From IMG/VR virus record IMGVR_UViG_3300020810_001156, positions 62,001 to 126,000 of that record: a stretch of 64,000 bases of DNA. One strand, 5' to 3'. Shown in pieces: positions 8,041-27,959 of this stretch (position 1 is its first letter; every line of letters starts with the position of its first letter). A program made the position numbers and the translations under genes. The notes below the pieces were generated by a model. The model ran no database searches. It worked only from the letters and a program-made list of their open reading frames with translations, and had not been told where the DNA came from.

Positions 8041-8059
8041 AATATTTTTCGTATATTTG
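8028..8059 (+). promoter_or_regulatory. Bacteroidota primary-sigma promoter (-33 TTTG / -7 TAnnTTTG)
   Basis: TTTG at 8028-8031, 20-nt spacer, TATATTTG at 8052-8059; matches the established Bacteroidetes consensus. Confidence 0.75.
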
Positions 8060-8298: not shown

Positions 8299-8330
8299 TT
8301 TGGATAATTGAAAAATTTTTCGTATATTTG
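8299..8330 (+). promoter_or_regulatory. Bacteroidota primary-sigma promoter upstream of primase
   Basis: TTTG 8299-8302, 20-nt spacer, TATATTTG 8323-8330. Confidence 0.75.
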
Positions 8331-13879: not shown

Positions 13880-16800
13880 ATGGCCAGAATTAAAAAGTAT
13901 TCACCTGAACAAAATTTATCATCGTTTCAAACTTTAATAGTAGATGAAAATCCCAATTCGGATTATTTTAGAATTACCGAATTTAAAGATACATTTACTG
14001 GTGGTAAAAATGGATTCCTAATAGAGGGTTCAGAATATCTAAAAGAATCTACTGAAATAAAAATTGAGATTTTAGATGTTAATGGAGAACCAATATATTA
14101 TGAACCAGGTAATGGAATCCCAGAATACTATGAAGGTATATCAAAGTTAATAGCTGTTTATATCTATGAAGATACTCCAATCGGATTGGGTAAGATTACT
14201 ATTTTGGGTGAACTAAAGGAGTATGATGATAATGGTGTAAAAAGACAAATTCCATCAGATTGGCGAGGTGCTTATAATGTTAAATGGGAAAGAACTTTTC
14301 AGATTAATAAAAATCTATCAAACGAAGATAGGGTAAGATTTTATCGTAGACCTAAGGTGGGTATTGATGAGATAGTTAAACCAATATTTAACAAAACCCC
14401 ACAAACAATTACTCAAACTGGGCAAGTAGATGGTTTACCTTTAATCCCAACCGAAAATACTCAACTATCTAATTTTTCTTTACCAACATCATATAGATTA
14501 AAAATCACAGATGATACATATTGGACCGGTTCTGCGGTTGGTCAACAAATAGAATTTAGTGGACTAAACTATTCACCAACCATTACTGATATTGTCAACA
14601 AAGATGAAGTATTAGTATCTCCACCATATTCTGAATCGGATTTAGTTAAACCATTTTCATCTCAAAATTATTCGGTATCATTTCCATATGTTGAGGGGGC
14701 AGTTGATTTAGCAACCGCTTTAACTGGTTCATTTGCTAAAATTAACATCACCAATATGAAAACATTTGTTGGTGATGCCGCTAGGGTTAAGGTGTTTAGA
14801 AAATCGGTATCCCAATTAACTGATTATGAGTTCGTACAAGAAATACAATTAGAATCAAACGAATTGTTGAGAGATTTAGAAAGTGTTGAATCAACGGAAA
14901 CTTTCTATGGTAATCTAAGTCAAAACTACATTAATAATTATTGGTTAACATCATCAAATGATTTAGTAACTACATTTAATCAAGATTTTTTATACAATTC
15001 TGTTGAACTTGATAATGGGGCATCTACTCCACAATATTTTTATACATCTCAATCATTGGGTATAACCAATGGTGTTGAATATAATTTATCGTTTAATGTT
15101 AGAAAAAGAACAAACATCTCAGCCGATGATTATTTAAAAGTTTATCTAAGTGGTTCGTTTGGAAATACAACTGTAGCACAAACAATTACAAATATAGGTA
15201 GTTCGAATGAATTATTACAAAAAACTTTAGTAAATGAAAATATAATTGCAGATAATATATCTGGTTCACAATTATATTTTGAAGTAAAAGGTAATGATTG
15301 GTTAATTAATAATATTTCATTAAGAGCAGCAGAAGAAACTTCTTTTTCTCCCGATGAAATTACATTTATACAAAGTGTACCAAAAACATTAGCTGAAGAA
15401 ACATTTGATTTTCGTTTTGAATTTTATGATATAAATAATAATTACATACCTGTATTAGTTGAAGAAACAAAAACATTCACAGGTGGTAACTTAAACTTAT
15501 TTACAAAAGAATTAATTCTTACACCAAATCAATTATATTTTGCATTTGATTCAGCATCGGCACCTGCAAATCCATTACCTCCATTAAACATTTTTATTGA
15601 TGTTGAAAAAAGAGTAATAACTGGTTCGGTAACATTTACATCTGGTGCATATGATGAGTTTGGAAATTTATTATCATCATCACAATATAATGGTGGGGTA
15701 TTTCCTGGTCTATTAACGGACAGAGATAAAGATATTGTAAAATTAAATGTATCTGATTATACTGGTTCAAGAGATGATATTACAGTTCAATATATTGAAT
15801 ATACTGGTGAGGTTGAGGGTGTAACCGATTCATTCGTAATCACTAGAGTTCAAGATGGTAAGGGTGGTGTAAACTTTGAGATTAGGCCTTACAGAGGTAC
15901 AATTATCAAAAACAAAGATGATAAAGAATTAGAAATTCAAGCAATTCGTATTGATGGTATTAATGAAATTATTCTTAAAGATAATTTACCACAAACTGGA
16001 TTTTCCGATGCAAAACTTAGAGTCCTTTCATCATCAATAGATGAAGTAACATTGGAAGAAAGTGGTTCTTATATACTTCTTTCAGAGGCATCATCTACTA
16101 AATTTATTAAAGGATTAAACGCTGGTTTAACTGGTAGTGGTGAAATTGATTATAACGCAAGATTTAATAGAGATTCTATTGATAATGAATTGACCGTATT
16201 CTTAATGGATGGTGAAACTTCTCAATCAATTCTTACATCAATTATTCTTACCGATTTACAAGATGGTTTAGATAGTGGGTTTGTAACATTTGATGCAGAT
16301 GTATTTACTATTAATCCAAGAACACAAACTCAATTTACTCCGCAATTTAGTAGTGTAACGGGTTCTTTTTATAAGAGGGGTACTAAAGCAAATCCAGTAT
16401 CAGCATCGATTGAGATATTCCCATCGATGTCAATCAATAAAGATTTTGTTCCTGAATACTGGATGTATTTTGTATCTCATTCTAAAGATGAAAGTATTGA
16501 GGTAACGGCATATGATGAGAATGGATTCTATTCACCACATGGTGAGTTGGGTTCATATATTGGGTTACCTGCTTCACAAAGCAAACAACTATTGGTAAAC
16601 TTTACTTACACAGAACCAGTAACTTCTGCATCGGTTCAAGTTGACCATATTTTCACCATTGTACCTGAAGGTAAGCCGGGTGATGAAACTGTATTGTTTG
16701 AAGTTAACCCTCAGACTGTAAATCTAAAATCGGATAGTAGAGGTAATGTCAATGATTTTAAACAATCTATAACTGATATTAGTTTAAGACAGGGTTCAAG

Positions 16801-19800
16801 ACGATTAATATTTACGGGTAGTGCAGAACCCGGTACGTTTACAATAGCATCCGAATCTATCAGTTCACAAAACATTGAAGTGGGATTACTACACTTAACT
16901 TCATCATTTGGTACTGATTATACGGCATCATTGATTGTAAGTGAATCATCAAACTTTACACAACTTAGTGGTAGTATTACATATCCATTAGAGATTAGAC
17001 CTTACTTTACATCATCTGTTTACACACAAAGTTTTACTCAAAATTTTACTAAAATATTAGATGGACCTCCTCCAATAGAACTAAACATAGTTCCTCAATC
17101 TGTAACTTTAATTGCTAATGAAGTAGAATTTGTAGGTGATTATTCCAACGCTACAACAACAATTACGGTAAAAGAGGGTTCTGATAATTTAATAAACACC
17201 AGTAGTGGTGCACCTGGTACATTTACTTTAGAATCTATTAATACAACAAACATAACTTCAAATTTAGTTTCGTTGGAAGGTGGAATATCTGCTAGTGTTG
17301 AATTTAGTGAATTTGAATATCCATATGTATCTGCTAGTGTTACATATAATATTAATGTATTTCCATTTTCATTAGGACCTGGTCATGAATATTCATCTTC
17401 TGTTTTTGAAAGAACTCAAAATTTTGTTAAAAGTATTACACCTCCAAACGCTAGAAGTGTTGAGTTAACAGCAACATCAGAAGTAGTTCACTTTGATGGT
17501 GATGGACAGGTAACATCTCCATTAGGTGCAATTACATTAACTGCTGAAGCTTACAATACAACAGGTTCTGTTTATTACGGATTCTTTAGAGATAGTTATG
17601 TGTGGCAACCATATTCACAAACAAATACAGTAACTGTTGGTTCTGGTGATGCAACTGAAGCTGGTGAAACTGTAAGCTGGGAGGTACGAATTAGAGATGG
17701 TGGTTCAACGGCTAATGTAGTAGCTACTGATGCAATTACTATTACTGGTGTACAAGATGGAGCATCAAATTATAATGTACAATTGGATAACCCATCTGTA
17801 ACTCTTACATCTGATGTAGATGGTACAACTCACTTTACTGGTAGTGGTGCTGTAATCAGAGCCGTAAAAGGTGTAACACCGCTAACTCACGTAACTTCAT
17901 ATTCACCATCCGACTATGTTTATGATGAGCAGGGTGTATTTATTGGTAACTTAGGACAATATTCTGCATCGATAGAATCTAAAAGTCCTTATTTAAATCA
18001 AACGGGAATATTCGCTGGAAACCCTGCAACTTTACCTGAAATACCAAATGGTGGTTGGACTTCACCATTTGATAATCCAACTGGAACAATTGTTTACAAA
18101 GTTGATATTGAAAATGGTAGAGCAACTTATTTCTTATCACAATCATTTGCAGTAACATTCGAAGGAGCAACTGGTCCTGGTGTTGTTGTAAGAGGTGAGT
18201 GGAATGCGAATGTTCCATATCTGTTTACTGGAACAAGAAGAGATGCGGTTGTTCAAGAGATTAGTGGTGATACACACTATTGGGCAACAACTGAAGCACT
18301 TATAAACAAACCAGCATATACTGATGGAAGTGCACCATATACCGCACAACCAACATTACCACCTGGCCCACCATATGAAGAAGGTTATGAAGATGCAACA
18401 ACTGGGTGGGAATACTTAGGACAAGAAGATTTCTTCGTAGCTGCTAAGATTGCAATTTTTGAAGAATCATTTGTAGAAAACACAATAAATGTTGGTAAAC
18501 CATCAACTGATTATAGTGTTAATCCACAAATAGCAATTTATGGTGGTGATAGTGAACCTTATATAGCCATCGGACAAGGAACTCAAGGATATGGACAGCA
18601 AGGTATATTTTTGGGTGTAACTGAAGATGGTGGACCTAATGGAACACAAGGAACATCTGGATTATTCTCAATAGAAAATGATACTGGTGATAGATATCTA
18701 AGATGGGATGGTTATGATTTAGAAATAGCAGGTTCGATACAAATCAAAGGAGGTTCTGCCGCAACCACTTCAAGCGTTGATGCTATCAACAACGCAACAG
18801 GTGGATTTATAAACCCATCGGAATATCAATTCGGACCAGGTAGTAGTCCTGATTTCTTCGAATTGGGAGAATTACCAGCAACTCCATCAGTTCCAGGTCT
18901 ATATTTAGGTTCTGATAATTTAGGTTATCACGATGGAACTGATTGGAACGCATTTTTAGATAATAATGGTAACTTTTATTTAGGAGGAGAAGAAGGTGGT
19001 TCATTATCATTCCAACAATCATCGGGTAATTTAAAAGTTTCTGGTATCGTATCAGCATCGGCTGGTATATTTGGTGGATTGGTAATTGATAATACTGGTG
19101 TATTCTTCCCATCAACATATGATGTGGGTAATCAATACTTTGGTGAAAGTGTTGTAACTCAATCTTTATCTTATATTGATTTTACGGATGCTATAACAAA
19201 TCAAGGTGGAGGTAGTAGAGCAATTATTGAAAGAAATACATCAATTTCTGATGTTGGTGATAATGCATATAAACAAATGACGAGAACCGCAGACCCATTT
19301 GGTAGTGGTTCTGCAGTTATGACAGCATTTGGTCTTGTAACCACAACAAACTTAGTAACAGGTTCAGCATCTGGTTCTTTCTTTGGTTCAGATAATGCAC
19401 ACTTTAAAGTAACTCCAAACTTATACGCACTTAATTCATCATATGAAATTGATTTTTGGTGGACTGGTTCATTTAATTTAGATGCTGGTGGTGCCAATGC
19501 CTCTAACTTAGTTTGGCAAGCTGGTACAAATCAAATTATAACATCCGATTCATCTTGGGAAGATGCTATCGGTTCACCTTATATACCAGATGAGTGGTTT
19601 CATGGTAGCCTTGATAGTGGAGCTGACCCAAGAATGAGTGCGTACATTCATGCATATGATGTACCTGTTTTAGGTATTGGTAATATTGTAGATTTGTATA
19701 TTCCAATTGTTCAATATCTAAACTCAACAACTTTACGTTCAACGGAAGATAATAACTATGGTAGTGATATAGAACTACATAACGCAGGAAGCGTAACTTT

Positions 19801-22288
19801 ATATTTAATTGATAGAATGTATGCAGGTGGTGGTGGAGAAGGTGTAAATACAATTAATGCTGGTTCACTTACTGCTGGTAGAGTTGAACCAAGAAGTATA
19901 ACTGGAGAAGCATTAAGAATATCAACATCTGGTTCATTGGATGGACAAACTCTCCCATTCTTATCTATGGGACAGCTTACTGCATCATATGATGCGCAAG
20001 GATTATTTTTCGGATTCCCATCTGGTTCAACTGTTCCAAGAATTTCTATGAGAGGACCTGATGGTAGTTTCTTTAGATATGATGGTAGTGTAGTACAAAT
20101 GAGTTCGGATATTATTGGTGGGGCAATTGAAGGTTCGGATATTGTTGGAGGTACAATCAGCGTACCAGCTACTGGAGTAAGTGCATCATTTAGTGTAAAT
20201 GCTCAGGGAGCATTATCAGCTTCCGATGCAAACATTCAGGGTATTATCAATGCTAATTCTGGTAGAATTGGTTCTTGGGTAATTGATGAAGATACTCAGG
20301 CATTAAGAGATGATAACTCTGAAATCGTATTTGAACCTAATATTCCTGAAATACAATTATTTGATAGTGCAGCTGCTAAGAAAGTAATTATTTCTCCATC
20401 GGATACCTTAACTGGTACGGGTGGAACTACAACTACTGTAGAATGGATAACAGCAGCACCAGACCCCAGTGATGTTAGATACGCTGGTACTGGAAATTCA
20501 AGCGGTATAATATCACAAGCATCCAGTGCTACAACAACACTTGTTCAATTTGGTAGTTACATATCTGGTGGATTAAGTGATTCTGATGATGAGGGAACAG
20601 ATGATGGATTGTTTGGTGTAACTGCTGGTGATTTAGAAGTAACGATAAATGTACCAGAAATGTATTTGATGAAACCAGAAGGTAGTTCGGTATCACATAC
20701 TACATCTTATCCAAATTATAATCCAACTTATAATTCTCAACTACATGGAGGAAGTTCTTTTCCGAAATATGCCTATGCATATCTTTATTTAGAATGTGTA
20801 GATACCGATACCTCTAATAGTGTTTTGGGTAGAACATTAATAGCAGCCGTTAATTCAAGAAGTGATTATACTGCTGGTAATTATTACGTTGGTGATGTTA
20901 ATGACGGTGGTGGTGGGGGAACATCTTTCCCAGGTATAAGTTCAGTAACTGGTGATACTGAAATTACATTAGCATCTGGAAGAAAAATGAGAGCAGACCA
21001 GATATTTAGTGGTGAACCTTTAAAAGTTTGGAGTTGGAACGATAAAATAGATGGTGTAGATGAAATAAATAAATTTGATTCATTTAAATTAGAAAAAGTA
21101 AAAAAACGAAAAGTAGATAAAGTTTATAAAGTAGTTGTTGGTGATAAGGAAGTGAGAGTTTCCGATACTCATGGGTTTTGGTTAGATAATAATGAAGAAG
21201 TAACCGCAGTTGATATTATACCAAATGAAACTAAAGTTTACATAGTAGATGGTGATACTATAAAACTACAAACAGTTGATTCAGTTGAAGAGATTGAAAC
21301 TGATGAGTGGGTATATACATTTGAAGTACCGGGTGTTCATAATTACATATCAAATGATATTTTATCACACAACCCATCAACTTGGACTTATACATCTGCT
21401 ACTACTGTAAGTGGATATGTTGGTTCTCAATCAGCAATAAGCAATCAAACTAAAACAATTAATATATCTCGAGCGGCAACTAATGCAGCATTCAGATATT
21501 CTATACGTTTAGCAGCTGCTTCAGGTAGAGCTATTAATGTAGATTCATCTGGTAACAGTTTAAATAGTTACAAAACACATACTGTTAGGTATGATGCTCT
21601 AAGAGCAGCAGGTCCAATACCAGCTGGATATTTGGGTAGAGCGGGTGGATATCAACCTGATTTATTATTAGATACTAATGTTAGTTTTGCGTTAGCATCT
21701 AACTTTGTTGAAATTAAAGCAGGTGGTATTCAGGTTGTATCAGACCCAGATACATTTGTTAAAATACCTAGACAAGCTACTGGGGGTGGAACAATTTTAG
21801 AAGCAAAAGGTGGAGAATCTATTTTCGAAGCTACGGGAACTGGAATTGGCCAGACTGCAATGACTGTAAAAGGTAATCTTATGCCAGAAAATGGTGATGA
21901 TTTTGATTTCGGTAGTGCTTCGGATATGTGGAAAAATATTTACGGCCATAACCTCAATGGTGTAGATATTGAAAACTTAGCTGTATCATTAGATGATGGT
22001 CCCGGTGCAACTACCACAGATACTAACTCAGTTAATGATAACTATGATAGTTATGTAAAATTGCCTGGTGGTGTTATCTTACAATGGGGACATATTTATG
22101 ATACATCATCACCAAGATATGTTGCATTCCCTACCCAATTCCCAAATGTTATTCATTCGGTAGTTTGTTCTACAAATAGAAATTCTGGTGGTAGTAACGG
22201 GTATAATCATGTTTACAACTACGATAGAAATGGTGTAGAATTAATTTTAGATGGTAATTATGGATTTTGGATTGCAATCGGACATTAA
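13880..22288 (+). CDS. Giant tail fibre / receptor-binding protein (2802 aa) with an internal Hint domain and a gp53-like C-terminal domain
   Basis: S/T/G-rich beta-type sequence; C-terminal YVKLPGGVILQWG...VAFPTQFPN is the common tail-fibre tip motif; immediately followed by a fibre-assembly chaperone. Confidence 0.75.
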   Translation: MARIKKYSPEQNLSSFQTLIVDENPNSDYFRITEFKDTFTGGKNGFLIEGSEYLKESTEIKIEILDVNGEPIYYEPGNGIPEYYEGISKLIAVYIYEDTPIGLGKITILGELKEYDDNGVKRQIPSDWRGAYNVKWERTFQINKNLSNEDRVRFYRRPKVGIDEIVKPIFNKTPQTITQTGQVDGLPLIPTENTQLSNFSLPTSYRLKITDDTYWTGSAVGQQIEFSGLNYSPTITDIVNKDEVLVSPPYSESDLVKPFSSQNYSVSFPYVEGAVDLATALTGSFAKINITNMKTFVGDAARVKVFRKSVSQLTDYEFVQEIQLESNELLRDLESVESTETFYGNLSQNYINNYWLTSSNDLVTTFNQDFLYNSVELDNGASTPQYFYTSQSLGITNGVEYNLSFNVRKRTNISADDYLKVYLSGSFGNTTVAQTITNIGSSNELLQKTLVNENIIADNISGSQLYFEVKGNDWLINNISLRAAEETSFSPDEITFIQSVPKTLAEETFDFRFEFYDINNNYIPVLVEETKTFTGGNLNLFTKELILTPNQLYFAFDSASAPANPLPPLNIFIDVEKRVITGSVTFTSGAYDEFGNLLSSSQYNGGVFPGLLTDRDKDIVKLNVSDYTGSRDDITVQYIEYTGEVEGVTDSFVITRVQDGKGGVNFEIRPYRGTIIKNKDDKELEIQAIRIDGINEIILKDNLPQTGFSDAKLRVLSSSIDEVTLEESGSYILLSEASSTKFIKGLNAGLTGSGEIDYNARFNRDSIDNELTVFLMDGETSQSILTSIILTDLQDGLDSGFVTFDADVFTINPRTQTQFTPQFSSVTGSFYKRGTKANPVSASIEIFPSMSINKDFVPEYWMYFVSHSKDESIEVTAYDENGFYSPHGELGSYIGLPASQSKQLLVNFTYTEPVTSASVQVDHIFTIVPEGKPGDETVLFEVNPQTVNLKSDSRGNVNDFKQSITDISLRQGSRRLIFTGSAEPGTFTIASESISSQNIEVGLLHLTSSFGTDYTASLIVSESSNFTQLSGSITYPLEIRPYFTSSVYTQSFTQNFTKILDGPPPIELNIVPQSVTLIANEVEFVGDYSNATTTITVKEGSDNLINTSSGAPGTFTLESINTTNITSNLVSLEGGISASVEFSEFEYPYVSASVTYNINVFPFSLGPGHEYSSSVFERTQNFVKSITPPNARSVELTATSEVVHFDGDGQVTSPLGAITLTAEAYNTTGSVYYGFFRDSYVWQPYSQTNTVTVGSGDATEAGETVSWEVRIRDGGSTANVVATDAITITGVQDGASNYNVQLDNPSVTLTSDVDGTTHFTGSGAVIRAVKGVTPLTHVTSYSPSDYVYDEQGVFIGNLGQYSASIESKSPYLNQTGIFAGNPATLPEIPNGGWTSPFDNPTGTIVYKVDIENGRATYFLSQSFAVTFEGATGPGVVVRGEWNANVPYLFTGTRRDAVVQEISGDTHYWATTEALINKPAYTDGSAPYTAQPTLPPGPPYEEGYEDATTGWEYLGQEDFFVAAKIAIFEESFVENTINVGKPSTDYSVNPQIAIYGGDSEPYIAIGQGTQGYGQQGIFLGVTEDGGPNGTQGTSGLFSIENDTGDRYLRWDGYDLEIAGSIQIKGGSAATTSSVDAINNATGGFINPSEYQFGPGSSPDFFELGELPATPSVPGLYLGSDNLGYHDGTDWNAFLDNNGNFYLGGEEGGSLSFQQSSGNLKVSGIVSASAGIFGGLVIDNTGVFFPSTYDVGNQYFGESVVTQSLSYIDFTDAITNQGGGSRAIIERNTSISDVGDNAYKQMTRTADPFGSGSAVMTAFGLVTTTNLVTGSASGSFFGSDNAHFKVTPNLYALNSSYEIDFWWTGSFNLDAGGANASNLVWQAGTNQIITSDSSWEDAIGSPYIPDEWFHGSLDSGADPRMSAYIHAYDVPVLGIGNIVDLYIPIVQYLNSTTLRSTEDNNYGSDIELHNAGSVTLYLIDRMYAGGGGEGVNTINAGSLTAGRVEPRSITGEALRISTSGSLDGQTLPFLSMGQLTASYDAQGLFFGFPSGSTVPRISMRGPDGSFFRYDGSVVQMSSDIIGGAIEGSDIVGGTISVPATGVSASFSVNAQGALSASDANIQGIINANSGRIGSWVIDEDTQALRDDNSEIVFEPNIPEIQLFDSAAAKKVIISPSDTLTGTGGTTTTVEWITAAPDPSDVRYAGTGNSSGIISQASSATTTLVQFGSYISGGLSDSDDEGTDDGLFGVTAGDLEVTINVPEMYLMKPEGSSVSHTTSYPNYNPTYNSQLHGGSSFPKYAYAYLYLECVDTDTSNSVLGRTLIAAVNSRSDYTAGNYYVGDVNDGGGGGTSFPGISSVTGDTEITLASGRKMRADQIFSGEPLKVWSWNDKIDGVDEINKFDSFKLEKVKKRKVDKVYKVVVGDKEVRVSDTHGFWLDNNEEVTAVDIIPNETKVYIVDGDTIKLQTVDSVEEIETDEWVYTFEVPGVHNYISNDILSHNPSTWTYTSATTVSGYVGSQSAISNQTKTINISRAATNAAFRYSIRLAAASGRAINVDSSGNSLNSYKTHTVRYDALRAAGPIPAGYLGRAGGYQPDLLLDTNVSFALASNFVEIKAGGIQVVSDPDTFVKIPRQATGGGTILEAKGGESIFEATGTGIGQTAMTVKGNLMPENGDDFDFGSASDMWKNIYGHNLNGVDIENLAVSLDDGPGATTTDTNSVNDNYDSYVKLPGGVILQWGHIYDTSSPRYVAFPTQFPNVIHSVVCSTNRNSGGSNGYNHVYNYDRNGVELILDGNYGFWIAIGH
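20942..21373 (+). other. Hint (intein-like) domain, 144 aa, without an endonuclease
   Basis: Block A SVTGDTEITLASG, block B VSDTHGFW, blocks F/G VYTFEVPGVHNYISNDILSHN, followed by Pro. Confidence 0.8.
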
Positions 22289-22299
22289 AAAAATAAATT

Positions 22300-22689
22300 A
22301 TGAGTGATATACGATACTTTGGACATTATGATGAAAATGGGGATTATAAAGCATTTTTCCCAACGGATATACATCCCGATACAGGTTCTATGGACACTCC
22401 CAACATAGAGTTAACAAAAGAACAATGGATTGAGGCAAGGCAAACTAGATGTAGAGTAATCGATGGTATTCACACAGTTGTACCATTAACTACCGAAGAA
22501 CAAAACGAAAGAGATTTACAAAATATTAGAAGAGAAAGAAATGAACTTTTGGATAAATCGGATTGGGTTGTACTTCCTCATTCTCCTATTACTGGTTCTA
22601 AATTAGATGATTGGTTACAATATCGACAATATTTAAGAGATGTAACTTCTCAAACTCCTCCATATACTTTACCAACTCAACCGGAATAA
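22300..22689 (+). CDS. Tail fibre assembly chaperone (Tfa/TAC-like)
   Basis: IRRERNELLDKSDWVVLPHSP...WLQYRQYLRDVT motif; directly downstream of the fibre gene. Confidence 0.8.
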   Translation: MSDIRYFGHYDENGDYKAFFPTDIHPDTGSMDTPNIELTKEQWIEARQTRCRVIDGIHTVVPLTTEEQNERDLQNIRRERNELLDKSDWVVLPHSPITGSKLDDWLQYRQYLRDVTSQTPPYTLPTQPE

Positions 22690-22738: not shown

Positions 22739-23011
22739 ATGCAAAACAAAACAGAACAATTGGATTTAAATTTAGTTGCTAAACTAAAAAAAATTCAAGA
22801 AGAACAAAATAATATAGTAATTTCATTAGGACAAATCACAGTACAAAAAAGACAATTATCAAAAAGTATTGAAGATTTGGAAAATAGGGAATTAACATTA
22901 GGTGAAAGTTTGGATAAATCAATTGAAATTCTAAATAAAGAATTAGCTGAAATTGATGGAAAATATCCAAATGGACAAATTGATTTAGAAAAAGGTACAA
23001 TTACTTACTAA
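22739..23011 (+). CDS. Small coiled-coil hypothetical protein, paralog of 27591..27959
   Basis: GQITVQK..L...L...KYPNGQIDLEKGTITY versus GQIYLRK..L...L..KEYPRGQINLKEGTLTY. Confidence 0.7.
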   Translation: MQNKTEQLDLNLVAKLKKIQEEQNNIVISLGQITVQKRQLSKSIEDLENRELTLGESLDKSIEILNKELAEIDGKYPNGQIDLEKGTITY

Positions 23012-23015
23012 AATA

Positions 23016-23047
23016 TTTGGTAATTCAAATATTTTTTAGTATATTTG
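23016..23047 (+). promoter_or_regulatory. Bacteroidota primary-sigma promoter driving the glycan-modification operon
   Basis: TTTG 23016-23019, 20-nt spacer, TATATTTG 23040-23047. Confidence 0.75.
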
Positions 23048-23083: not shown

Positions 23084-25267
23084 ATGCCTAAAAAGAAAAA
23101 ACTGTTATACATTGCACCCCATCTTTCTACTGGGGGCATGCCACAATATCTTCTCAAACAAATCCAAACATTTGTAAATGATTTTGAAATAGTTGTTGTT
23201 GAATATAATGACCATAGTGGTGGTGTATTTGTAGTTCAAAAAAATCAAATAAATGATTTAGTGAAACTATACTCTTTATATGAAAATAAAAAAGAGTTAT
23301 TAGAGATTATAGATTCCGAAAATCCTGATATAATTCATTTTCACGAAATACCACATCATTTTGTAGATACATCTTTATTAGATATTATTTTTGATAATGA
23401 AAAAAGAAATTATAATATTGTAGTAACCACACATGGTTCACTAACAAATCCAGACGAAATAAGATATCATCCAGATAGATATGTTTTGGTATCTGAGTGG
23501 AGTAGAAGAAAATTTGAACATTTAGGTATTGAAACTGATATTTGGGATTACCCAATTGAAGATTTTAAGTATGATAAAAAATCTGCAAAAAAAGAATTAG
23601 GATTTGAATCCGATTGGAAGCATGTAGTGATGATTGGTTTATTTACTGAGGGTAAAAATCAAGGTGAAATATTTGGGGTAGCTAGACAAATGGAAAAGTA
23701 CAAAATTAAATTTCACTTTGTTGGAAACCAAGCTATGAACTTCGAAAATTATTGGAAACCTTTAATGGATGTTAAACCCGATAATTGTATTATTTGGGGA
23801 GAACGAAATGATGTAGATAAATTTTACAAAGCATCGGATATGTTTTATTTTAGTTCTAAATTAGAATTAAATCCTTTATCGGTTAAAGAAGCATTATCAT
23901 ATGGATTACCATCTATATTCAGAAAACTACATACTTATTTGGATACATATGATGATAATCCACTGGTTACTTATATCGATGATGATTTAAATAATACTAA
24001 ACAAATTATATTAGAAAAGTTACAACCTGATTTTAATGAAGTACCTGGTTGGTTTTCATATTCTGATTTATACGATAAGGTGATTAGGGATTTGCCCGAT
24101 AATTCTAATATAGTTGAGGTTGGTAGTTGGTTAGGTAAATCTACCAATCATATGGCCAACAAAATAAAATATTCAAAAAAGAACTTTAATTTTACAACAG
24201 TTGATACGTTTAAGGGTACAATTGATGAAACTTTACATCAGAGTATTGTAAATAGTTTTGGGGGAGATGTATTTTATGAATTTATAGATAACACAATTTT
24301 ATCAAACAACTATAACAACTTTGAAATTATAAAAGATACATCCGAAAATGCGTCATCCCAATTTCAAAATAACTCATTAGATTTTGTTTTTTTGGATGCG
24401 GGCCACACATATGATGATGTGATTAAAGATATAAAATATTGGTATAAAAAAGTTAAGCCAGGTGGAATTATTGCTGGTGATGATTATGTTAAGGAATTTA
24501 TGGGAGTAGTTGATGCTGTGAGAGAATCGTTTTATTATCAGTTTGAACAAATAAACAAATTTCAATGGGCTAGAAGAAAACCTCGTATTCAAATCAAACA
24601 CCTAATGACTAGGCCAAATGATTTAAGAGAAATGGTATCACAAGCTTCACTTAAACAATTGGAAAGGTATGGAATGGTTTATGAACCAATTGTAAATAAA
24701 CCTTATACTGATTTTGCACCAAAGGAATTTTGTAGAAGGCCTGAACATCTAAGTAAAGATAACAAACCGGGTGAGTTATATCCTGGTGCTGGTTTGGGTT
24801 GGATAACTGGGGGGCATTATGGGTGCTATATGGCTCATAGAGGTGCTTTGGAAACAATGGATAATGATAACTTTGATTATACTCTTATCTTCGAAGCTGA
24901 TGCATTTATTTATACTGGTTTAGAGGAGTTTGTAGATATTGTACATAAAGCTTGTTTCATATCAGAAAGAGATGATGTTACCTACATATCTTTCGCTGAT
25001 AATCCATCTAGAAGTAAAGAAAAAATAGATGAGTTGTTTTCCAAAACGGCACATAATCAAGATTTAGCACATGCTTATTTAATACCAAATCGTAAAAAAC
25101 AATGGTGGTTAGATAGAATCAAAGATTGTAAGTGGGATGTTGCTGATTTGTGGTATAACCACGTATTCTACGAACATCCAGAAAAAAGATATACAACCAA
25201 TAAAGTATATTCAAAGCAAGCAGAAGGATACTCTTTATTAGATTTAAAAAATAAAACTTGGTTATAA
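23084..25267 (+). CDS. Triple fusion: GT-B (GT4-like) glycosyltransferase + class I SAM methyltransferase + GT25-like glycosyltransferase
   Basis: PHLSTGGMPQY / KNQGEIF / ELNPLSVKEALSYGLP (GT4); VEVGSWLGKS / FLDAGHTY / KVKPGGIIAGDDY (Methyltransf_24-like); GHYGCYMAH / LIFEADA (GT25-like). Confidence 0.82.
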   Translation: MPKKKKLLYIAPHLSTGGMPQYLLKQIQTFVNDFEIVVVEYNDHSGGVFVVQKNQINDLVKLYSLYENKKELLEIIDSENPDIIHFHEIPHHFVDTSLLDIIFDNEKRNYNIVVTTHGSLTNPDEIRYHPDRYVLVSEWSRRKFEHLGIETDIWDYPIEDFKYDKKSAKKELGFESDWKHVVMIGLFTEGKNQGEIFGVARQMEKYKIKFHFVGNQAMNFENYWKPLMDVKPDNCIIWGERNDVDKFYKASDMFYFSSKLELNPLSVKEALSYGLPSIFRKLHTYLDTYDDNPLVTYIDDDLNNTKQIILEKLQPDFNEVPGWFSYSDLYDKVIRDLPDNSNIVEVGSWLGKSTNHMANKIKYSKKNFNFTTVDTFKGTIDETLHQSIVNSFGGDVFYEFIDNTILSNNYNNFEIIKDTSENASSQFQNNSLDFVFLDAGHTYDDVIKDIKYWYKKVKPGGIIAGDDYVKEFMGVVDAVRESFYYQFEQINKFQWARRKPRIQIKHLMTRPNDLREMVSQASLKQLERYGMVYEPIVNKPYTDFAPKEFCRRPEHLSKDNKPGELYPGAGLGWITGGHYGCYMAHRGALETMDNDNFDYTLIFEADAFIYTGLEEFVDIVHKACFISERDDVTYISFADNPSRSKEKIDELFSKTAHNQDLAHAYLIPNRKKQWWLDRIKDCKWDVADLWYNHVFYEHPEKRYTTNKVYSKQAEGYSLLDLKNKTWL

Positions 25268-26409
25268 TGATTTACGATAATTTAATAAAATTAGAGGACA
25301 ATATTAGAGAAGTTAGAAATACTTTTATTTTTAATTTTGTTAGAGGTGCTTATATCGAAGTAAAGGGTTCCCAACCAAAAAACTATAAAGTACAATTTAT
25401 AGACCCAAAAACAAATTATATTCATTTCCAAACAGATATCTCAAATGGGCAGTGGGCAAAATGTAGTATTGAATTTTTTGTTAATTGGAATGTTAAAATT
25501 TGGGAAGGTGATATTTTGGTAGAAGATTATCAATATAATGCTGAAAATAAAAGAGTTTATATAGCATTGGATTCGAAGGCATTGGGTGATACTTTGGCTT
25601 GGGTTCCATATGTTGAGGAGTTTGGTAAACTACATAATTGTAAAATGATAACTTCCACATTTCACAATCATATGTTTGAAAAGCAATACCCAAACATAGA
25701 ATTTGTTGAACCGGGTACAAATGTACATAATTTATATGCTATGTATTCATTAGGGTTATTTTATAATGAAGATAATACATACAAAATGTTAAAACATCCA
25801 TCTAATTTTTTAAATGAACCAATGCAGAAAATGGCAACTGATATATTGGGTATGGATTTTAAGGAAGTTAAACCAAAATTAGTGGATAAACAAATTAAAA
25901 AAGATAATAAACTAATCACTATTGCAATTCATGGAACCGCACAAACAAAGTATTGGAATAATCCAAATGGTTGGCAAGATGTTGTAGATTGGTTAAATGA
26001 TAAAGGATACAAAGTAAAATTATTATCCAGAGAAAACGATGGATATATGGGTAACGAGCATCCTAACGGAATCATTAAACACCCAGAAGGAACATTAGAA
26101 TCAGTTATGGATGAGATGAGAAAATCTAAAGCCTTTATTGGTATTGGTAGTGGATTGAGTTGGTTAAGTTGGGCATTGGGAACTAAGACTGTATTGATTA
26201 GTGGATTCTCATACGATTGGGCAGAAATGGAAGATTGTATTAGAATTGGAACACCTGAAGGAAAATGTAGTGGTTGTTTCAATAGATTGAGATTAGATGC
26301 TGGTGATTGGAATTGGTGTCCTGACCACAAAGAAACTAAAAGACAGTTTGAGTGTACTAAATCCATTACATCAGAAATGGTAATCAAAGAATTGGAAAAG
26401 TTTTTATGA
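25258..26409 (+). CDS. Protein O-heptosyltransferase of the AAH/TibC (autotransporter strand-loop-strand) family
   Basis: KRVYIALDSKALGDTLAW, FIGIGSGLSWLSWALG..TVLISGFS, and the four-Cys iron-finger pattern CSGCFN...WNWCPDHKETKRQFECTKSI characteristic of TibC/AAH. Confidence 0.8.
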   Translation: MVIMIYDNLIKLEDNIREVRNTFIFNFVRGAYIEVKGSQPKNYKVQFIDPKTNYIHFQTDISNGQWAKCSIEFFVNWNVKIWEGDILVEDYQYNAENKRVYIALDSKALGDTLAWVPYVEEFGKLHNCKMITSTFHNHMFEKQYPNIEFVEPGTNVHNLYAMYSLGLFYNEDNTYKMLKHPSNFLNEPMQKMATDILGMDFKEVKPKLVDKQIKKDNKLITIAIHGTAQTKYWNNPNGWQDVVDWLNDKGYKVKLLSRENDGYMGNEHPNGIIKHPEGTLESVMDEMRKSKAFIGIGSGLSWLSWALGTKTVLISGFSYDWAEMEDCIRIGTPEGKCSGCFNRLRLDAGDWNWCPDHKETKRQFECTKSITSEMVIKELEKFL

Positions 26410-26795
26410 AAAAAGTTTGGATAAATGGATGTTTTGATGTTTTACATCATGCTCATTTTAAAATGATTGAATTTGCATCTACTTTTGGTGATTTATTAGT
26501 AATTGGTATTGATTCTGATAAACGAGTAAAAGAGTTAAAAGGAGAAGATAGACCTTTTCATACGCAAGAAGAGAGAAAGTATAACTTAGAAAGAATTAAA
26601 GGAGTAAAAAAAGTAATAATATTTGATTCATCTCATGCATTGGAAGAAATGATAAAATCATATGAACCTGATGTATTTGTAATTGGTTCTGATTATAAAA
26701 ATAAACCAATAGTTGGTGAACAATATGCAAAATCAATTGTTTACTTTAATCGAATGGAAAATTTTAGTACTACAAAGATATTAAGTAATGGGTAG
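26406..26795 (+). CDS. hldC: HldC/RfaE domain II-like heptose-1-phosphate nucleotidyltransferase
   Basis: NGCFDVLHHAH (HxxH), IGIDSDKRVKELKGEDRP, IGSDY, C-terminal FSTT; overlaps both neighbours. Confidence 0.78.
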   Translation: MKKVWINGCFDVLHHAHFKMIEFASTFGDLLVIGIDSDKRVKELKGEDRPFHTQEERKYNLERIKGVKKVIIFDSSHALEEMIKSYEPDVFVIGSDYKNKPIVGEQYAKSIVYFNRMENFSTTKILSNG

Positions 26796-27540
26796 AATAT
26801 TATTAATAGGAGAACAATGTGATGATATCTTTATTTATGGAGATACACCAAGACTTTCACCCGAAGGACCTGCTCCTGTATTTATTCCGAAAAGAGAAGT
26901 TTACAATGGTGGGATGGGAATGAATGTAATGGGTAATTTAATGGCATTGGGGGTTGATGTAGATTTTGAACATCAACAATCTCCAATTACAAAGACAAGG
27001 CACATTCACGAACCATCGAATACCTTACTTCTAAGAATTGATGAGGAATTAAATATTGATAATATAGGTGATAGATTACCTAAGTTAGATTTTTGGGAAT
27101 ATCCAATGGTTGTAGTTTCCGATTACAACAAAGGATTCCTAACCGAAGAAGATATTGCATATATCGGATTCAAGCACCCAAATGTAATTTGTGATACAAA
27201 GAAAAAGTTGGGTGAATGGTGTAAAGATTTGCGATTCATAAAATTAAATCGTTCAGAATTTGAAAATAATAAAGAATTTATTGAAGAAAACGATTGGATT
27301 TTAGAAAAGTTAATAATTACATTAGATAAAGATGGGTGTATGTACAAAGGTACATCATATCCAACTGAACAAGTAGAGATTATGGATATCTCAGGAGCAG
27401 GTGATACTTTTGTAGCAGGATTTGTGAAAGAGTTCTTAGATTCCGAAGATATTCCAAAATCAATACAATTTGGAAATCGTTGTTCAGCACAAGTTGTACA
27501 AAAACGAGGTGTAACAACAATAGATTACGAAAATTTATAA
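26788..27540 (+). CDS. hldA: HldA/RfaE domain I-like heptose-7-phosphate kinase (PfkB family)
   Basis: RLSPEGPAPV, GGMGMNVMGNL, VVVSDYNKGFL, DISGAGDTFVAG, VVQKRGVT. Confidence 0.8.
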   Translation: MGRILLIGEQCDDIFIYGDTPRLSPEGPAPVFIPKREVYNGGMGMNVMGNLMALGVDVDFEHQQSPITKTRHIHEPSNTLLLRIDEELNIDNIGDRLPKLDFWEYPMVVVSDYNKGFLTEEDIAYIGFKHPNVICDTKKKLGEWCKDLRFIKLNRSEFENNKEFIEENDWILEKLIITLDKDGCMYKGTSYPTEQVEIMDISGAGDTFVAGFVKEFLDSEDIPKSIQFGNRCSAQVVQKRGVTTIDYENL

Positions 27541-27590: not shown

Positions 27591-27959
27591 ATGGCAAAAG
27601 AAAGCAAACAACAAATTGAATTACTTACTATTGATTTAGGTGAGAGTACAATCGGTTCTATCAAAGAAAAAAATGCAAAGATTAACGATATCGTTAATGC
27701 ATTTGGTCAAATCTATCTTCGTAAAAAAGAATTAAACGAAGAGTTAGAAAAGTTAGAAACAACTTTACAACAAGCTGAAGCTGATTTTAAAGAATCAAAC
27801 GATGCTTTAAGAGAAGAATTAAGTGCATTGGATAAAGAGTATCCAAGAGGACAGATAAACCTTAAAGAAGGTACACTAACATACAACCCAGCTATCAAAG
27901 AGCAGATGAATCAGCAAAACGCAAATTTAACATCTGATAATATAGAAGTGGTAAAGTAA
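27591..27959 (+). CDS. Small coiled-coil hypothetical protein, paralog of 22739..23011
   Basis: Shared C-terminal YPxGQIxLxxGTxTY motif. Confidence 0.7.
   Translation: MAKESKQQIELLTIDLGESTIGSIKEKNAKINDIVNAFGQIYLRKKELNEELEKLETTLQQAEADFKESNDALREELSALDKEYPRGQINLKEGTLTYNPAIKEQMNQQNANLTSDNIEVVK

What the first reader, a model, noticed from the sequence alone, without database searches (positions are those of the whole stretch)
25258..27540. Phage-encoded protein O-heptosylation system: AAH/TibC-like transferase plus its own NDP-heptose enzymes
Seen: an AAH/TibC-like protein with the four-Cys iron-finger pattern is translationally coupled to HldC-like and HldA-like genes. Established: in bacteria AAH/TibC use ADP-heptose to glycosylate autotransporter adhesins; HldA/HldC perform two steps of ADP-heptose synthesis, and many Bacteroidota are thought to lack heptose in their LPS. 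Heptose enzymes have been reported in viruses, so the interest lies in the linked pathway and its likely substrate. Inference: the phage makes heptose donor and heptosylates its own Ser-rich fibres and capsid (shielding, stability or receptor binding). GmhA, GmhB and HldD are not in this window and are predicted to be elsewhere in the genome.
Basis: partly seen in the sequence, partly recalled or inferred. Interest (0 to 1): 0.82.

Follow-up and report, generated by a model that had tools for sequence, protein, structure and literature searches.

The report
Phage protein heptose-glycosylation gene cassette
A large salt-marsh phage carries a four-gene cassette next to its giant tail-fibre gene that most likely makes an activated seven-carbon sugar and attaches it to serines of fibre proteins, which would give a concrete use for the unexplained heptose genes of aquatic phages.

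Summary
Window 25267-26409 encodes a true TibC/AAH-family protein: TIGR04414 scores 272 bits against a cutoff of 200, the predicted fold matches TibC at TM 0.85, and the catalytic Asp, the sugar-binding Thr, Lys and Trp, and all four iron-finger Cys are kept. It overlaps compact HldC-like and HldA-like genes. Together these form one four-gene cassette behind a conserved Bacteroidota-type promoter.

No GmhA, GmhB or HldD lies in the window. HldD is probably not needed, and some relatives keep the transferase but lack the Hld genes.

New findings:
- All 80 phage homologues replace TibC Arg-286, the adenine contact, with a hydrophobic residue.
- In more distant phages the TibC domain is fused to GT4 and methyltransferase domains.
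- This clade sits next to genes for (Gly-Ser/Thr-Ser)n collagen-like repeat proteins. In phages these are fibres. In Methylococcales and Polaromonas they are small secreted proteins. Autotransporters are not the neighbours.

The likely acceptor is therefore a fibre protein. In this phage the link is weaker, because its 2802-aa fibre has only a four-triplet run. Nothing supports capsid glycosylation. I rate this a new variant of a known kind.

The parts
23016..23047 (+). Bacteroidota-type promoter-like element (TTTG-N19-GTATATTTG, i.e. -33 TTTG / -7 TAnnTTTG), 36 nt upstream of the cassette's first ATG
   Evidence: There are 3 matches in the window against 0.07 expected, all intergenic on the + strand. 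The other two precede the primase gene at 8346. The motif is conserved upstream of the cassette in 19 of 29 distinct relatives although the spacer has diverged. The consensus is cited as Bacteroidetes-specific in PMC6414381. The pattern was refined after seeing the sites, so the statistic is inflated.
23084..25267 (+). 727-aa three-domain enzyme: GT4 glycosyltransferase (about aa 60-320), SAM methyltransferase (aa 344-468), and a weak GT25-like C-terminal part. It is the first gene of the cassette and probably extends and methylates the glycan.
   Evidence: Pfam gives Methyltransf_24 at 70 bits, Glycos_transf_1 at 38 bits, Glyco_transf_4 at 24 bits and Glyco_transf_25 at 20.5 bits, the last below its cutoff. 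The stop overlaps the next start (TAATG). In distant phages GT4 and methyltransferase domains are fused to the TibC domain in one polypeptide.
25267..26409 (+). TibC/AAH-family (BAHT) protein O-heptosyltransferase homologue, 380 aa. The ORF is listed from TTG 25258.
   Evidence: TIGR04414 at 272 bits, cutoff 200. TibC is the only PDB sequence relative. Foldseek TM to 4RAP is 0.85. In the protein's own 380-aa numbering, D108, T224, K228, W299 and C334, C337, C351, C363 are the equivalents of TibC D110, T226, K230, W305 and the four iron-finger Cys, and all are conserved; the equivalent of TibC R286 is V280.
26406..26795 (+). HldC-like heptose-1-phosphate nucleotidyltransferase, 129 aa
   Evidence: TIGR02199 is the best hit at 103 bits, below its cutoff. 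phrog_7878 gives E 5e-41. It is 34% identical to E. coli HldE residues 341-468. Homologues lie in the heptose clusters of marine cyanomyoviruses.
26788..27540 (+). Compact HldA-like heptose-7-phosphate kinase (PfkB family), 250 aa
   Evidence: TIGR02198 is the best hit at 101.8 bits, below its cutoff. phrog_8133 gives E 7.5e-74. It aligns with E. coli HldE residues 13-304, including RLSPEGPAPV and GAGD. Homologues in P-SSM2, S-SM2 and S-CAM1/3 sit beside a phosphoheptose isomerase gene.
13880..22288 (+). 2802-aa tail fibre, the best candidate acceptor in this phage. It has a Gp53-like C-terminal domain.
   Evidence: Pfam Gp53-like_C at 46 bits. It is followed by a tail-fibre assembly chaperone. 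The order fibre, chaperone, cassette is conserved in relatives. Ser is 10.3%.
18632..18667 (+). Short collagen-like run GPNGTQGTSGLF (fibre aa 1585-1596), a possible acceptor site
   Evidence: It is the only run of four or more Gly-X-Y triplets in the window's large proteins. It is conserved as GPTGTAGTTGL and GPNGTSGTSGL in relatives. Other relatives carry 6-11 triplets elsewhere in the same fibre. This is weak evidence.
22300..22689 (+). Tail-fibre assembly chaperone
   Evidence: Pfam Phage_tail_APC at 48 bits. PHROG tail-fibre assembly families also match.
22739..23011 (+). 90-aa coiled-coil protein, a paralogue of 27591-27959. The pair brackets the cassette.
   Evidence: BLASTP gives 39% identity, E 9e-10. 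Both copies are conserved in relatives.
27591..27959 (+). 122-aa coiled-coil protein, a paralogue of 22739-23011, immediately downstream of the cassette
   Evidence: It is preceded by the TATTTATA intergenic motif.

Best explanation
The four overlapping genes at 23084-27540 form one glycosylation cassette of a T4-like jumbo phage of about 250 kb from salt marshes, probably infecting Bacteroidota.

Proposed mechanism:
1. HldA-like kinase phosphorylates D-glycero-D-manno-heptose 7-phosphate.
2. A phosphatase that the phage does not encode removes the 7-phosphate.
3. [quoted passage not shown]
4. The TibC-like enzyme transfers the heptose to serine hydroxyls of a rod-shaped phage protein in the cytoplasm before virion assembly.
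5. The GT4 / methyltransferase / GT25 protein extends and methylates the sugar.

The most likely acceptor is the 2802-aa tail fibre encoded three genes upstream. Across the enzyme clade, the acceptor class is (Gly-Ser/Thr-Ser)n collagen-like repeats.

Shown here: enzyme family membership, conserved catalytic residues, gene order, domain fusions and neighbourhood associations.

Inferred: the sugar, the nucleotide, the acceptor, and the biological role (fibre stability, protease or immunity shielding, or receptor binding).
For: Enzyme identity.

Donor genes:
- Searches identify them.
- They are immediately downstream of the TibC-like gene in the window family.
- They are also downstream in unrelated phage groups L044-L052 and L059. 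In L059 an HldD-like epimerase (E 4e-32) is adjacent.
- These genes are rare in phages: 31 and 52 of 50,697 GenBank records.

Cooperation with GT4 and methyltransferase: a 1-nt overlap here, and fusion into single proteins of 700-1100 aa in other phages and in Microcystis phage Mel-JY01. Of the best 150 clusters at 50% identity, 135 are longer than 450 aa.

Acceptor:
- Classical BAHT genes sit next to their autotransporter substrate.
- By the same logic, 22 of 30 distant phage groups have an S/T-rich Gly-X-Y repeat ORF in the locus, often within 150 nt.
- Phage-type homologues in bacterial chromosomes (Methylobacter luteus, Methylobacter sp., other Methylococcales, Polaromonas) are two-gene islands. 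The partner is a signal-peptide protein with GTS/GTA repeats 4-150 nt away, and it has a Pfam Collagen hit.
- Only 1 of about 52 classical BAHT loci has such an ORF.
- The tree places all phage sequences and these bacterial ones in one clade (support 98/96). Its sister clade also neighbours GSS-repeat lipoproteins.

Other context:
- The cassette is a stable feature of an abundant lineage.
- Fragments of all four genes occur in salt-marsh metatranscriptome assemblies.
- TibC's 12 active sites face the hollow centre of a ring that holds a rod-like substrate (PMC4358343). The thumb and iron-finger residues needed for that ring are conserved here.
Against: - No experiment. The sugar, nucleotide and acceptor are all inferred.
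- This phage's own fibre has only a four-triplet collagen-like run. Its G[ST][ST] count equals chance (10 against 10.1 expected). The repeat-rich fibres of other phages have no homologue in the window.
- Arg-286, which contacts adenine N1 and whose mutation to Ala abolished or largely diminished TibC activity, is Val here and hydrophobic in all 80 phage homologues.
- HldA and HldC score below NCBIfam's trusted cutoffs.
- GmhA was not found.
- Relatives L016 and L026 lack both Hld genes, and L020-L027 lack HldA.
- The cassette has a host-type promoter shared with the primase gene, not the TATTTATA motif that precedes structural genes. It may therefore be expressed before the fibres.
- Collagen-like fibres are common in phage structural regions, and no matched phage control was available.
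- RNA-library contigs could be DNA carry-over.
Confidence: 0.55

Rival explanations
1. The cassette modifies the host cell surface (LPS, capsule, S-layer or host adhesins) during infection. This would block superinfection or adsorption of progeny to lysing cells. It is the usual reading of 'LPS-related' auxiliary genes in aquatic T4-like phages.
For: The literature on pelagimyophages and cyanomyophages interprets rfaE, UDP-glucose dehydrogenase and glycosyltransferase genes in the host-recognition cluster this way (PMC7029224). The cassette has a host-type promoter like the primase gene, which suggests early or middle expression. The bacterial partners of phage-type homologues are exported proteins with signal peptides, so a host surface protein with such repeats could be the target.
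Against: The transferase belongs to a family known only for protein O-glycosylation, and scores 24-27 bits on the LPS heptosyltransferase models. In phages the adjacent repeat proteins are fibre-like phage proteins, not host proteins. The cassette is fixed next to the fibre and chaperone genes across the lineage.
Confidence: 0.2
2. The enzyme is a TibC-fold protein glycosyltransferase that uses a donor other than ADP-heptose. This could be CDP-, UDP- or GDP-heptose, or a different sugar. The clade has lost the adenine-reading arginine, and the phage nucleotidyltransferase is divergent.
For: R286 is V/L/I/A/M in all 80 IMG/VR homologues and in Mel-JY01, and R in every classical BAHT. Only 42 of the best 150 clusters keep R. 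TibC R286 gives ADP specificity and R286A largely abolishes activity. Heptose nucleotidyltransferases can make CDP- and UDP-heptose (PMC11573728). HldC-like scores below its cutoff.
Against: The heptose-contacting Trp and the phosphate-contacting Thr and Lys are invariant. The Methylococcales homologues also lack the Arg and have no private nucleotidyltransferase gene nearby, so they presumably use a donor the cell already makes. The Arg-5 hallmark of promiscuous transferases is absent: the window has RMENFSTT where E. coli has FEDGCSTT. Viral heptose enzymes tested so far made ADP-heptose.
Confidence: 0.15
3. The cassette glycosylates phage DNA (a hypermodified base), as T4-like phages do with other GT-B enzymes.
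For: T4-like phages are known to glycosylate DNA. Sugar-nucleotide genes also accompany DNA-modifying transferases in other phages (general knowledge; reviewed in PMC12619734).
Against: The full TibC architecture is retained, including the N-terminal beta-barrel, thumb and iron finger, which are used for protein-substrate binding and ring assembly. No base-hydroxymethylase or similar gene is in the window. The neighbourhood association is with repeat proteins.
Confidence: 0.03

Closest known systems
Bacterial autotransporter heptosyltransferases (BAHT: TibC of ETEC, AAH of DAEC; NCBIfam TIGR04414; PDB 4RAP/4RB4)
   Same: About 31-33% identity over the full length, and the same four-part fold (TM 0.85). 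The catalytic Asp110, Thr226, Lys230, Trp305, four iron-finger Cys and hydrophobic thumb tip are conserved. The gene sits beside a long rod-like protein gene.
   Different: - Encoded by a phage.
- The neighbour is a tail fibre or a (G-S/T-S)n collagen-like protein, not an autotransporter.
- Arg-286, the adenine contact, is replaced by Val.
- The stereo-selectivity position (Pro300 in TibC, Ser294 in AAH) is Gly.
- It is coupled or fused to GT4 and methyltransferase domains.
- It forms a separate, well-supported clade.
Heptose gene clusters of marine T4-like cyanophages (P-SSM2, S-SM2, S-CAM1/3, P-TIM68) and 'rfaE' genes of pelagimyophage host-recognition clusters
   Same: Homologous compact kinase (31-44% identity) and nucleotidyltransferase (32-46%) genes. 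They are adjacent to each other and close to tail-fibre genes. There is no GmhB.
   Different: The cyanophage clusters add a short phosphoheptose isomerase, an epimerase, a carbamoyltransferase and 2OG oxygenases, but have no TibC-like gene (none at E <= 1e-5). The window has the TibC-like transferase but no isomerase. Function is unknown in both; the literature assumes LPS modification.
Virion glycosylation in mycobacteriophages (Freeman et al. 2023, cited in PMC12619734)
   Same: Phage-encoded glycosyltransferases decorate the phage's own structural proteins.
   Different: Those phages use unrelated transferases, target the C-termini of capsid and tail-tube subunits, and use host-made donors. 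No heptose and no BAHT-type enzyme is involved.
Glycosylated bacterial collagen-like proteins (for example BclA of the Bacillus exosporium; from general knowledge, not tested here)
   Same: Gly-X-Thr/Ser triplet repeats in a surface fibre, densely O-glycosylated.
   Different: Different sugars (rhamnose, anthrose) and different transferases. No link to heptose or to TibC-like enzymes has been reported in the library searched.

Membership tests
BAHT / TibC-AAH (TIGR04414) | Score above the curated family cutoff over the full length | tested here: met
   272 bits against a cutoff of 200. Protein residues 20-381 match profile positions 9-373 of 374.
BAHT / TibC-AAH (TIGR04414) | Fold: N-terminal beta-barrel, GT-B catalytic domain, beta-hairpin thumb and iron finger | tested here: met
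   The AF2 model has pLDDT 87.5 and TM 0.85 to 4RAP over 372-382 columns. The next best hits, GT9 enzymes, reach TM 0.56 at most.
BAHT / TibC-AAH (TIGR04414) | Catalytic base Asp110 and donor contacts Thr226, Lys230, Trp305 | tested here: met
   All four are conserved in the window and in all 41 aligned sequences, apart from one Thr-to-Ser change. In the 150 best clusters the counts are D 150, K 148 and W 150.
BAHT / TibC-AAH (TIGR04414) | Arg286 contacting adenine N1 (ADP specificity; R286A abolishes or largely diminishes activity) | tested here: not met
   Val in the window. V/L/I/A/M in all phage homologues. Arg in classical BAHTs.
BAHT / TibC-AAH (TIGR04414) | Four Cys of the 1Fe-0S iron finger | tested here: met
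   C334, C337, C351 and C363 align with TibC C339, C342, C358 and C370.
BAHT / TibC-AAH (TIGR04414) | Adjacent autotransporter (AIDA-I / TibA type) as substrate | tested here: not met
   No autotransporter was found in the window or in any phage locus. Classical loci do have one.
BAHT / TibC-AAH (TIGR04414) | Ring-shaped dodecamer | not testable with these tools
   Only indirect support: the thumb tip (Y/M where TibC has F/V), the Phe368 equivalent and the iron finger are conserved.
BAHT / TibC-AAH (TIGR04414) | Transfers heptose from ADP-heptose to Ser of a protein | not testable with these tools
   Needs an enzyme assay or mass spectrometry.
HldC / RfaE domain II (TIGR02199) | Score above the curated cutoff; nucleotidyltransferase motifs | tested here: inconclusive
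   It is the best hit, but at 103 bits against a 181.5 cutoff. Next best is glycerol-3-P cytidylyltransferase at 71 bits. It is 34% identical to HldE residues 341-468, with HHAH (HAGH in E. coli) and STT motifs.
HldA / RfaE domain I (TIGR02198) | Score above the curated cutoff; PfkB catalytic motifs plus the RfaE-type N-terminal motif | tested here: inconclusive
   It is the best hit, but at 101.8 bits against a 345 cutoff. Ribokinase scores 45 bits. It aligns with HldE residues 13-304 with deletions. RLSPEGPAPV and GAGD are present.
LPS heptosyltransferases WaaC/WaaF (TIGR02193, GT9) | Score above the family cutoff | tested here: not met
27.4 bits against 185.3, and 24.2 bits against 437. Structural TM is 0.42-0.58.
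Complete ADP-heptose pathway (GmhA, HldA, GmhB, HldC, HldD) | All steps encoded by the phage | tested here: inconclusive
   Only HldA-like and HldC-like genes are found in the 64 kb and in the flanks of about 130 related loci. About 188 kb of the source genome could not be read.

The most novel reading that the evidence does not exclude
Phage-type TibC enzymes form a widespread, undescribed system. The family has at least 917 clusters at 50% identity with E <= 1e-30 against the phage-type profile (classical BAHTs probably included), mostly multi-domain fusions. The system would O-heptosylate, then extend and methylate, serines of (Gly-Ser/Thr-Ser)n collagen-like rods. It would act on phage tail fibres and on small secreted proteins of Methylococcales and Polaromonas. 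That would explain why aquatic phages carry NDP-heptose synthesis genes, a question left open in 2024 commentaries on Tang et al., Science 2024 (PMC11573728, PMC11461863). It may use a nucleotide-binding mode, or a nucleotide, different from ADP recognition by Arg-286.
Probability: 0.4. Interest if true: 0.78.

Novelty: new variant of a known kind. Interest (0 to 1): 0.68.

Why it matters
Heptose-nucleotide genes have been annotated in marine T4-like phages for about twenty years and are routinely filed as 'LPS genes'. Recent work showed that viral enzymes make ADP-heptose but left its use unknown.

A protein O-heptosyltransferase tied to those genes and to fibre genes gives a specific, testable use: glycosylation of the phage's own host-recognition fibres. 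If true, it would:
- extend virion glycosylation from mycobacteriophages to abundant aquatic jumbo phages;
- define a new acceptor class for the TibC family, namely collagen-like Gly-Ser/Thr-Ser repeats;
- affect how fibre-receptor interactions, virion stability and host range are modelled for these phages.

The bacterial two-gene islands in culturable Methylobacter offer a tractable system for testing the chemistry.

Tried and rejected
- **LPS heptosyltransferase reading:** rejected on profile scores and fold.
- **AIDA-like repeats in the fibres:** BLASTP self-comparison of the 1407-, 2802- and 4828-aa proteins found no internal repeats. No autotransporter or AIDA Pfam domains were found.
- **Ser-richness as a substrate clue:** 10-12% Ser is ordinary for fibres. 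G[ST][ST] triplets are at chance level in the window.
- **Window homologues of the repeat-rich fibres of other phages:** none.
- **GmhA, GmhB and HldD:** no hits in the window or in any fetched locus, except HldD-like genes in L059, L042 and L066. I did not walk the remaining roughly 188 kb of contig IMGVR_UViG_3300020810_001156, because it would have needed more look-ups than allowed.
- **T4 late promoter TATAAATA:** not enriched, 15 found against 13 expected.
- **Sigma-70 promoter and terminator scans:** uninformative.
- **Near-identical DNA in GenBank phages:** none.
- **Literature:** nothing on a phage TibC/AAH enzyme, on heptosylation of tail fibres, or on collagen-like proteins with heptosyltransferases. 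No paper on Mel-JY01 is in the library.
- **C-terminal third of the 727-aa protein:** no PDB sequence relative.
- **Metatranscriptome contigs:** they cover all four genes, but they cannot prove transcription or show a single transcript.

Full report
**What is in the sequence**

All sizeable ORFs of the window lie on the + strand. The window carries T4-type structural genes:
- portal gp20, prohead protease, major capsid protein gp23, gp15-like protein and large terminase;
- giant fibre-like proteins of 1407, 2802 and 4828 aa.

The DNA is identical to part of IMG/VR contig IMGVR_UViG_3300020810_001156, which is 252,603 bp. By arithmetic on the coordinates, the window corresponds to about 62,001-126,000 of that contig. 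Near-identical sequence is held by many salt-marsh metagenomes. The closest cultured relatives by capsid protein are:
- Flavobacterium phage vB_FspM_immuto, 52%;
- Microcystis phage Mel-JY01, 52%;
- Rhodothermus phage RM378, 39%.

**The observation**

The first matches NCBIfam TIGR04414 (hepto_Aah_TibC) at 272 bits against a curated cutoff of 200, almost end to end. The LPS heptosyltransferase models reach only 24-27 bits. TibC is its only sequence relative among solved structures (E 2.5e-48). An AlphaFold model built on 23 homologues (pLDDT 87.5) superposes on TibC at TM 0.85 over the whole chain. WaaC, WaaF and other GT9 enzymes stay at 0.42-0.58.

I mapped the residues described for TibC in eLife 2014 (PMC4358343) through the HMMER alignment and a MAFFT alignment of 41 sequences.
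- Conserved: the catalytic base Asp110, the phosphate and sugar contacts Thr226, Lys230 and Trp305, the four iron-finger cysteines, and the hydrophobic thumb tip.
- Not conserved: Arg286.

The likely start is the ATG at 25267, giving 380 aa like the homologues. It overlaps the upstream stop as TAATG.

The second and third ORFs have RfaE domain II and RfaE domain I as their best NCBIfam hits. Both score below the trusted cutoffs: 103 against 181.5 bits, and 101.8 against 345 bits. They align along their whole length with the two halves of E. coli HldE.
- The kinase is a shortened version that keeps the RfaE-type N-terminal motif (RLSPEGPAPV) and the PfkB GAGD motif.
- The transferase keeps the HxxH and STT motifs.

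Both belong to PHROG families found mainly in marine T4-like cyanophages. There they sit together beside a short phosphoheptose isomerase gene, an epimerase gene and tail-fibre genes.

The gene just upstream (23084-25267, 727 aa) combines three domains: a GT4 glycosyltransferase, a SAM methyltransferase and a weak GT25-like region. It overlaps the transferase gene by one base.

The order fibre, chaperone, small coiled-coil protein, GT4/MT/GT25, TibC-like, HldC-like, HldA-like, small coiled-coil paralogue, large cytidylyltransferase-like protein, terminase is conserved in two sets of contigs:
- contigs whose TibC-like protein is 62-69% identical;
- 25 further contigs found through the kinase.

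In more distant phages (45-53% identity), and in Mel-JY01, the TibC-like domain is the C-terminal or central part of 700-1100-aa proteins that also carry GT4 and/or methyltransferase domains. In the 1.84-billion-protein library the family has 917 clusters at E <= 1e-30. Of the best 150, 135 are longer than 450 aa. Such fusions argue that these activities work on the same product, so the glycan is probably an extended, methylated one and not a lone heptose.

**The donor pathway**

No SIS (GmhA), HAD (GmhB) or epimerase (HldD) gene is in the window. This holds by Pfam on all large ORFs and by phmmer with E. coli and cyanophage seeds. None lies within 10 kb of the cassette in any relative. The exceptions are HldD-like genes in three distant phage loci (L059, L042, L066); in L059 the gene sits directly before the kinase gene.

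- Commentaries on Tang et al. (Science 2024) state that the phosphatase is absent from viruses and that the use of viral NDP-heptose is unknown.
- HldD is not needed in principle. TibC uses ADP-D,D-heptose, the direct product of HldA, a phosphatase and HldC.
- The position that makes TibC reject L,D-heptose (Pro300) is Gly here.
- Relatives L016 and L026 lack both Hld genes, and L020-L027 lack the kinase, yet all keep the transferase and the GT4/MT/GT25 gene.

The phage-encoded steps are therefore auxiliary. 'Its own NDP-heptose enzymes' overstates what is present.

The rest of the genome, about 188 kb, could not be read with the tools available.

**The lost arginine**

In TibC, Arg286 hydrogen-bonds adenine N1. 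It is given as the basis of ADP specificity, and its mutation to alanine abolished or largely diminished activity.
- It is Val in the window.
- It is V/L/I/A/M in all 80 IMG/VR homologues and in Mel-JY01.
- It is Arg in every classical autotransporter-linked enzyme examined.
- Among the 150 best clusters, only 42 keep Arg.

This could mean a different nucleotide. However, the Methylococcales homologues also lack the Arg and have no private nucleotidyltransferase gene in the flanks examined. The window's HldC-like protein also lacks the Arg-5 hallmark of promiscuous heptose nucleotidyltransferases. I treat a changed donor as a minority possibility.

**The acceptor**

The fibres have 10-12% Ser, no internal repeats and no AIDA-like domains.

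A stronger clue came from neighbours of homologues. Classical BAHT genes lie next to their autotransporter substrate. Phage-type homologues lie next to genes for proteins with long runs of Gly-Ser/Thr-Ser triplets.
- In 22 of 30 distant phage groups, such an ORF is in the locus, often within 150 nt. It looks like a fibre, with a globular N-terminus followed by hundreds of residues of GTS/GSS.
- A scan of one genome per bacterial species found phage-type homologues (46-51% identity) in isolate chromosomes of Methylobacter luteus and Methylobacter sp., and in MAGs of other Methylococcales and of Polaromonas.
- In those bacteria the gene forms a two-gene island between housekeeping genes. Its partner is a signal-peptide protein with GTS/GTA repeats 4-150 nt away, and that protein gives a Pfam Collagen hit.
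- Only 1 of about 52 classical loci has such an ORF, and that one is a doubtful 66-aa frame.

A maximum-likelihood tree puts all phage sequences and these bacterial ones in one clade (support 98/96). Its sister is a small Arg-keeping clade that also neighbours GSS-repeat lipoproteins. The autotransporter-linked enzymes lie apart. By the logic that holds for aah-aidA and tibC-tibA, the acceptor class of this clade is the serine-rich collagen-like rod. A rod would also suit a ring enzyme whose twelve active sites face a central channel.

The caveat for this window is large. Its 2802-aa fibre has only one four-triplet run, GPNGTQGTSGLF at aa 1585. The run is conserved in close relatives, and other relatives carry 6-11 triplets elsewhere in the same fibre. 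The repeat-rich fibres of other phages have no homologue in the window. The fibre remains the best candidate by position only. Nothing points to the capsid.

**Expression and host**

A bipartite motif, TTTG-N19-GTATATTTG, lies 36 nt upstream of the cassette, and occurs twice upstream of the primase gene. That is three hits against 0.07 expected, although I refined the pattern after seeing the sites. It is conserved upstream of the cassette in 19 of 29 distinct relatives while the spacer has diverged. It fits the Bacteroidetes promoter consensus TAnnTTTG (PMC6414381).

Structural genes are instead preceded by TATTTATA: 8 of its 11 + strand copies fall in the 5% of the window that is intergenic.

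This supports a Bacteroidota host. It also suggests that the cassette is transcribed as its own unit, perhaps earlier than the fibres. That fits either pre-loading the cell with enzyme and donor, or acting on host targets.

Contigs from salt-marsh metatranscriptome libraries cover parts of all four genes and bridge two of the gene junctions. DNA carry-over cannot be excluded.

**Comparison with what is known**

The enzyme passes most membership tests for the BAHT family. It fails two: Arg286 and the autotransporter partner.
- JGI's pipeline already labels homologues 'autotransporter strand-loop-strand O-heptosyltransferase'.
- In GenBank phage records only four hold a homologue, one of them annotated merely as 'methyltransferase FkbM'.
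- I found no paper describing a phage TibC/AAH enzyme, heptosylated phage fibres, or a link between heptosyltransferases and collagen-like proteins.
- The aquatic-phage literature reads rfaE and glycosyltransferase genes in the fibre region as host O-chain modification.
- Virion glycosylation is established for mycobacteriophages with unrelated enzymes.

**Verdict**

The most likely function is glycosylation of fibre proteins with a heptose-based, probably extended and methylated glycan. I put confidence in that at about 0.55. Host-surface modification is the main rival at about 0.2. This is a new variant of a known kind. Its value is that it offers a testable function for viral heptose genes and a new acceptor class for the TibC family.

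Noticed in passing
window 20960-21373 (aa 2361-2498 of the 2802-aa fibre): There is a Hint/intein-like domain inside the tail-fibre protein (Pfam Intein_splicing, 31 bits, below the 35.8 cutoff). The residue after the C-terminal His-Asn is Pro, not Cys, Ser or Thr, so it may be a self-cleaving Hint domain and not a splicing intein. Separately, a classical BAHT on a Neokomagataea plasmid sits next to 'Hint domain-containing protein' genes.
   Followed up: partly
window 12416-13234: A 272-aa UDP-glucose/GDP-mannose dehydrogenase-like protein has the NAD-binding and central domains but no C-terminal UDP-binding domain. It lies just upstream of the fibre gene. It may be a further sugar-nucleotide enzyme or a truncated remnant.
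   Followed up: no
window 28005-31151: A 1048-aa protein has an N-terminal cytidylyltransferase/NMNAT-like domain and, by eye, a KxDG ligase-like motif (EKTDGQ) further on. It is conserved directly downstream of the cassette in all relatives, and a 'cytidylyltransferase like protein' (homology to the window protein not tested) is annotated in a similar position in Mel-JY01. Function unknown.
   Followed up: partly
window 6441, 7410, 27547, 27969, 34131, 36791, 45324, 63313 (+ strand): The motif TATTTATA (extended form TTATATTTATA) occurs 11 times on the + strand, and 8 of these are in short intergenic regions; seven of the eight lie upstream of annotated + strand genes in the window (most 14-58 nt from the next start), the eighth after the last ORF. 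It is a candidate late-promoter element, different from the T4 TATAAATA.
   Followed up: partly
window 8028-8059 and 8299-8330: Two copies of the Bacteroidota-type promoter-like motif lie upstream of the primase-like gene at 8346. This is the same element as in front of the glycosylation cassette.
   Followed up: partly
window 9281-12412: A single 1043-aa ORF joins an Mre11/SbcD-type phosphoesterase domain to a Rad50/SbcC-type ATPase. In T4 these are two genes, gp47 and gp46, so this is a fusion.
   Followed up: no
window 7627-8040: A SegE-like GIY-YIG homing endonuclease gene lies between structural-type and replication genes.
   Followed up: no
window 22739-23011 and 27591-27959: Two paralogous small coiled-coil proteins (39% identity) bracket the cassette on both sides, and both are conserved in relatives. 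This could be a trace of how the cassette was inserted, or they could be fibre-associated factors.
   Followed up: partly
L100 (254-kb contig binned as Bacteroidetes MAG), L089 (63.6-kb contig binned as Bacteroides MAG): Contigs in 'bacterial' MAGs carry phage-type TibC fusions. L089 also has a GSS-repeat fibre-like ORF. They are probably phage genomes binned with their hosts, which gives weak independent support for Bacteroidota hosts.
   Followed up: partly
L081 (P-SSM2) and L278 (S-CAM3): The phosphoheptose isomerase annotated in cyanophage heptose clusters is only 106-114 aa, much shorter than E. coli GmhA at 192 aa. The clusters also contain a Nol-like carbamoyltransferase, a cupin annotated as cysteine dioxygenase, and (in P-SSM2) 2OG oxygenases next to a tail-fibre gene. 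This hints at a modified heptose in those phages.
   Followed up: no
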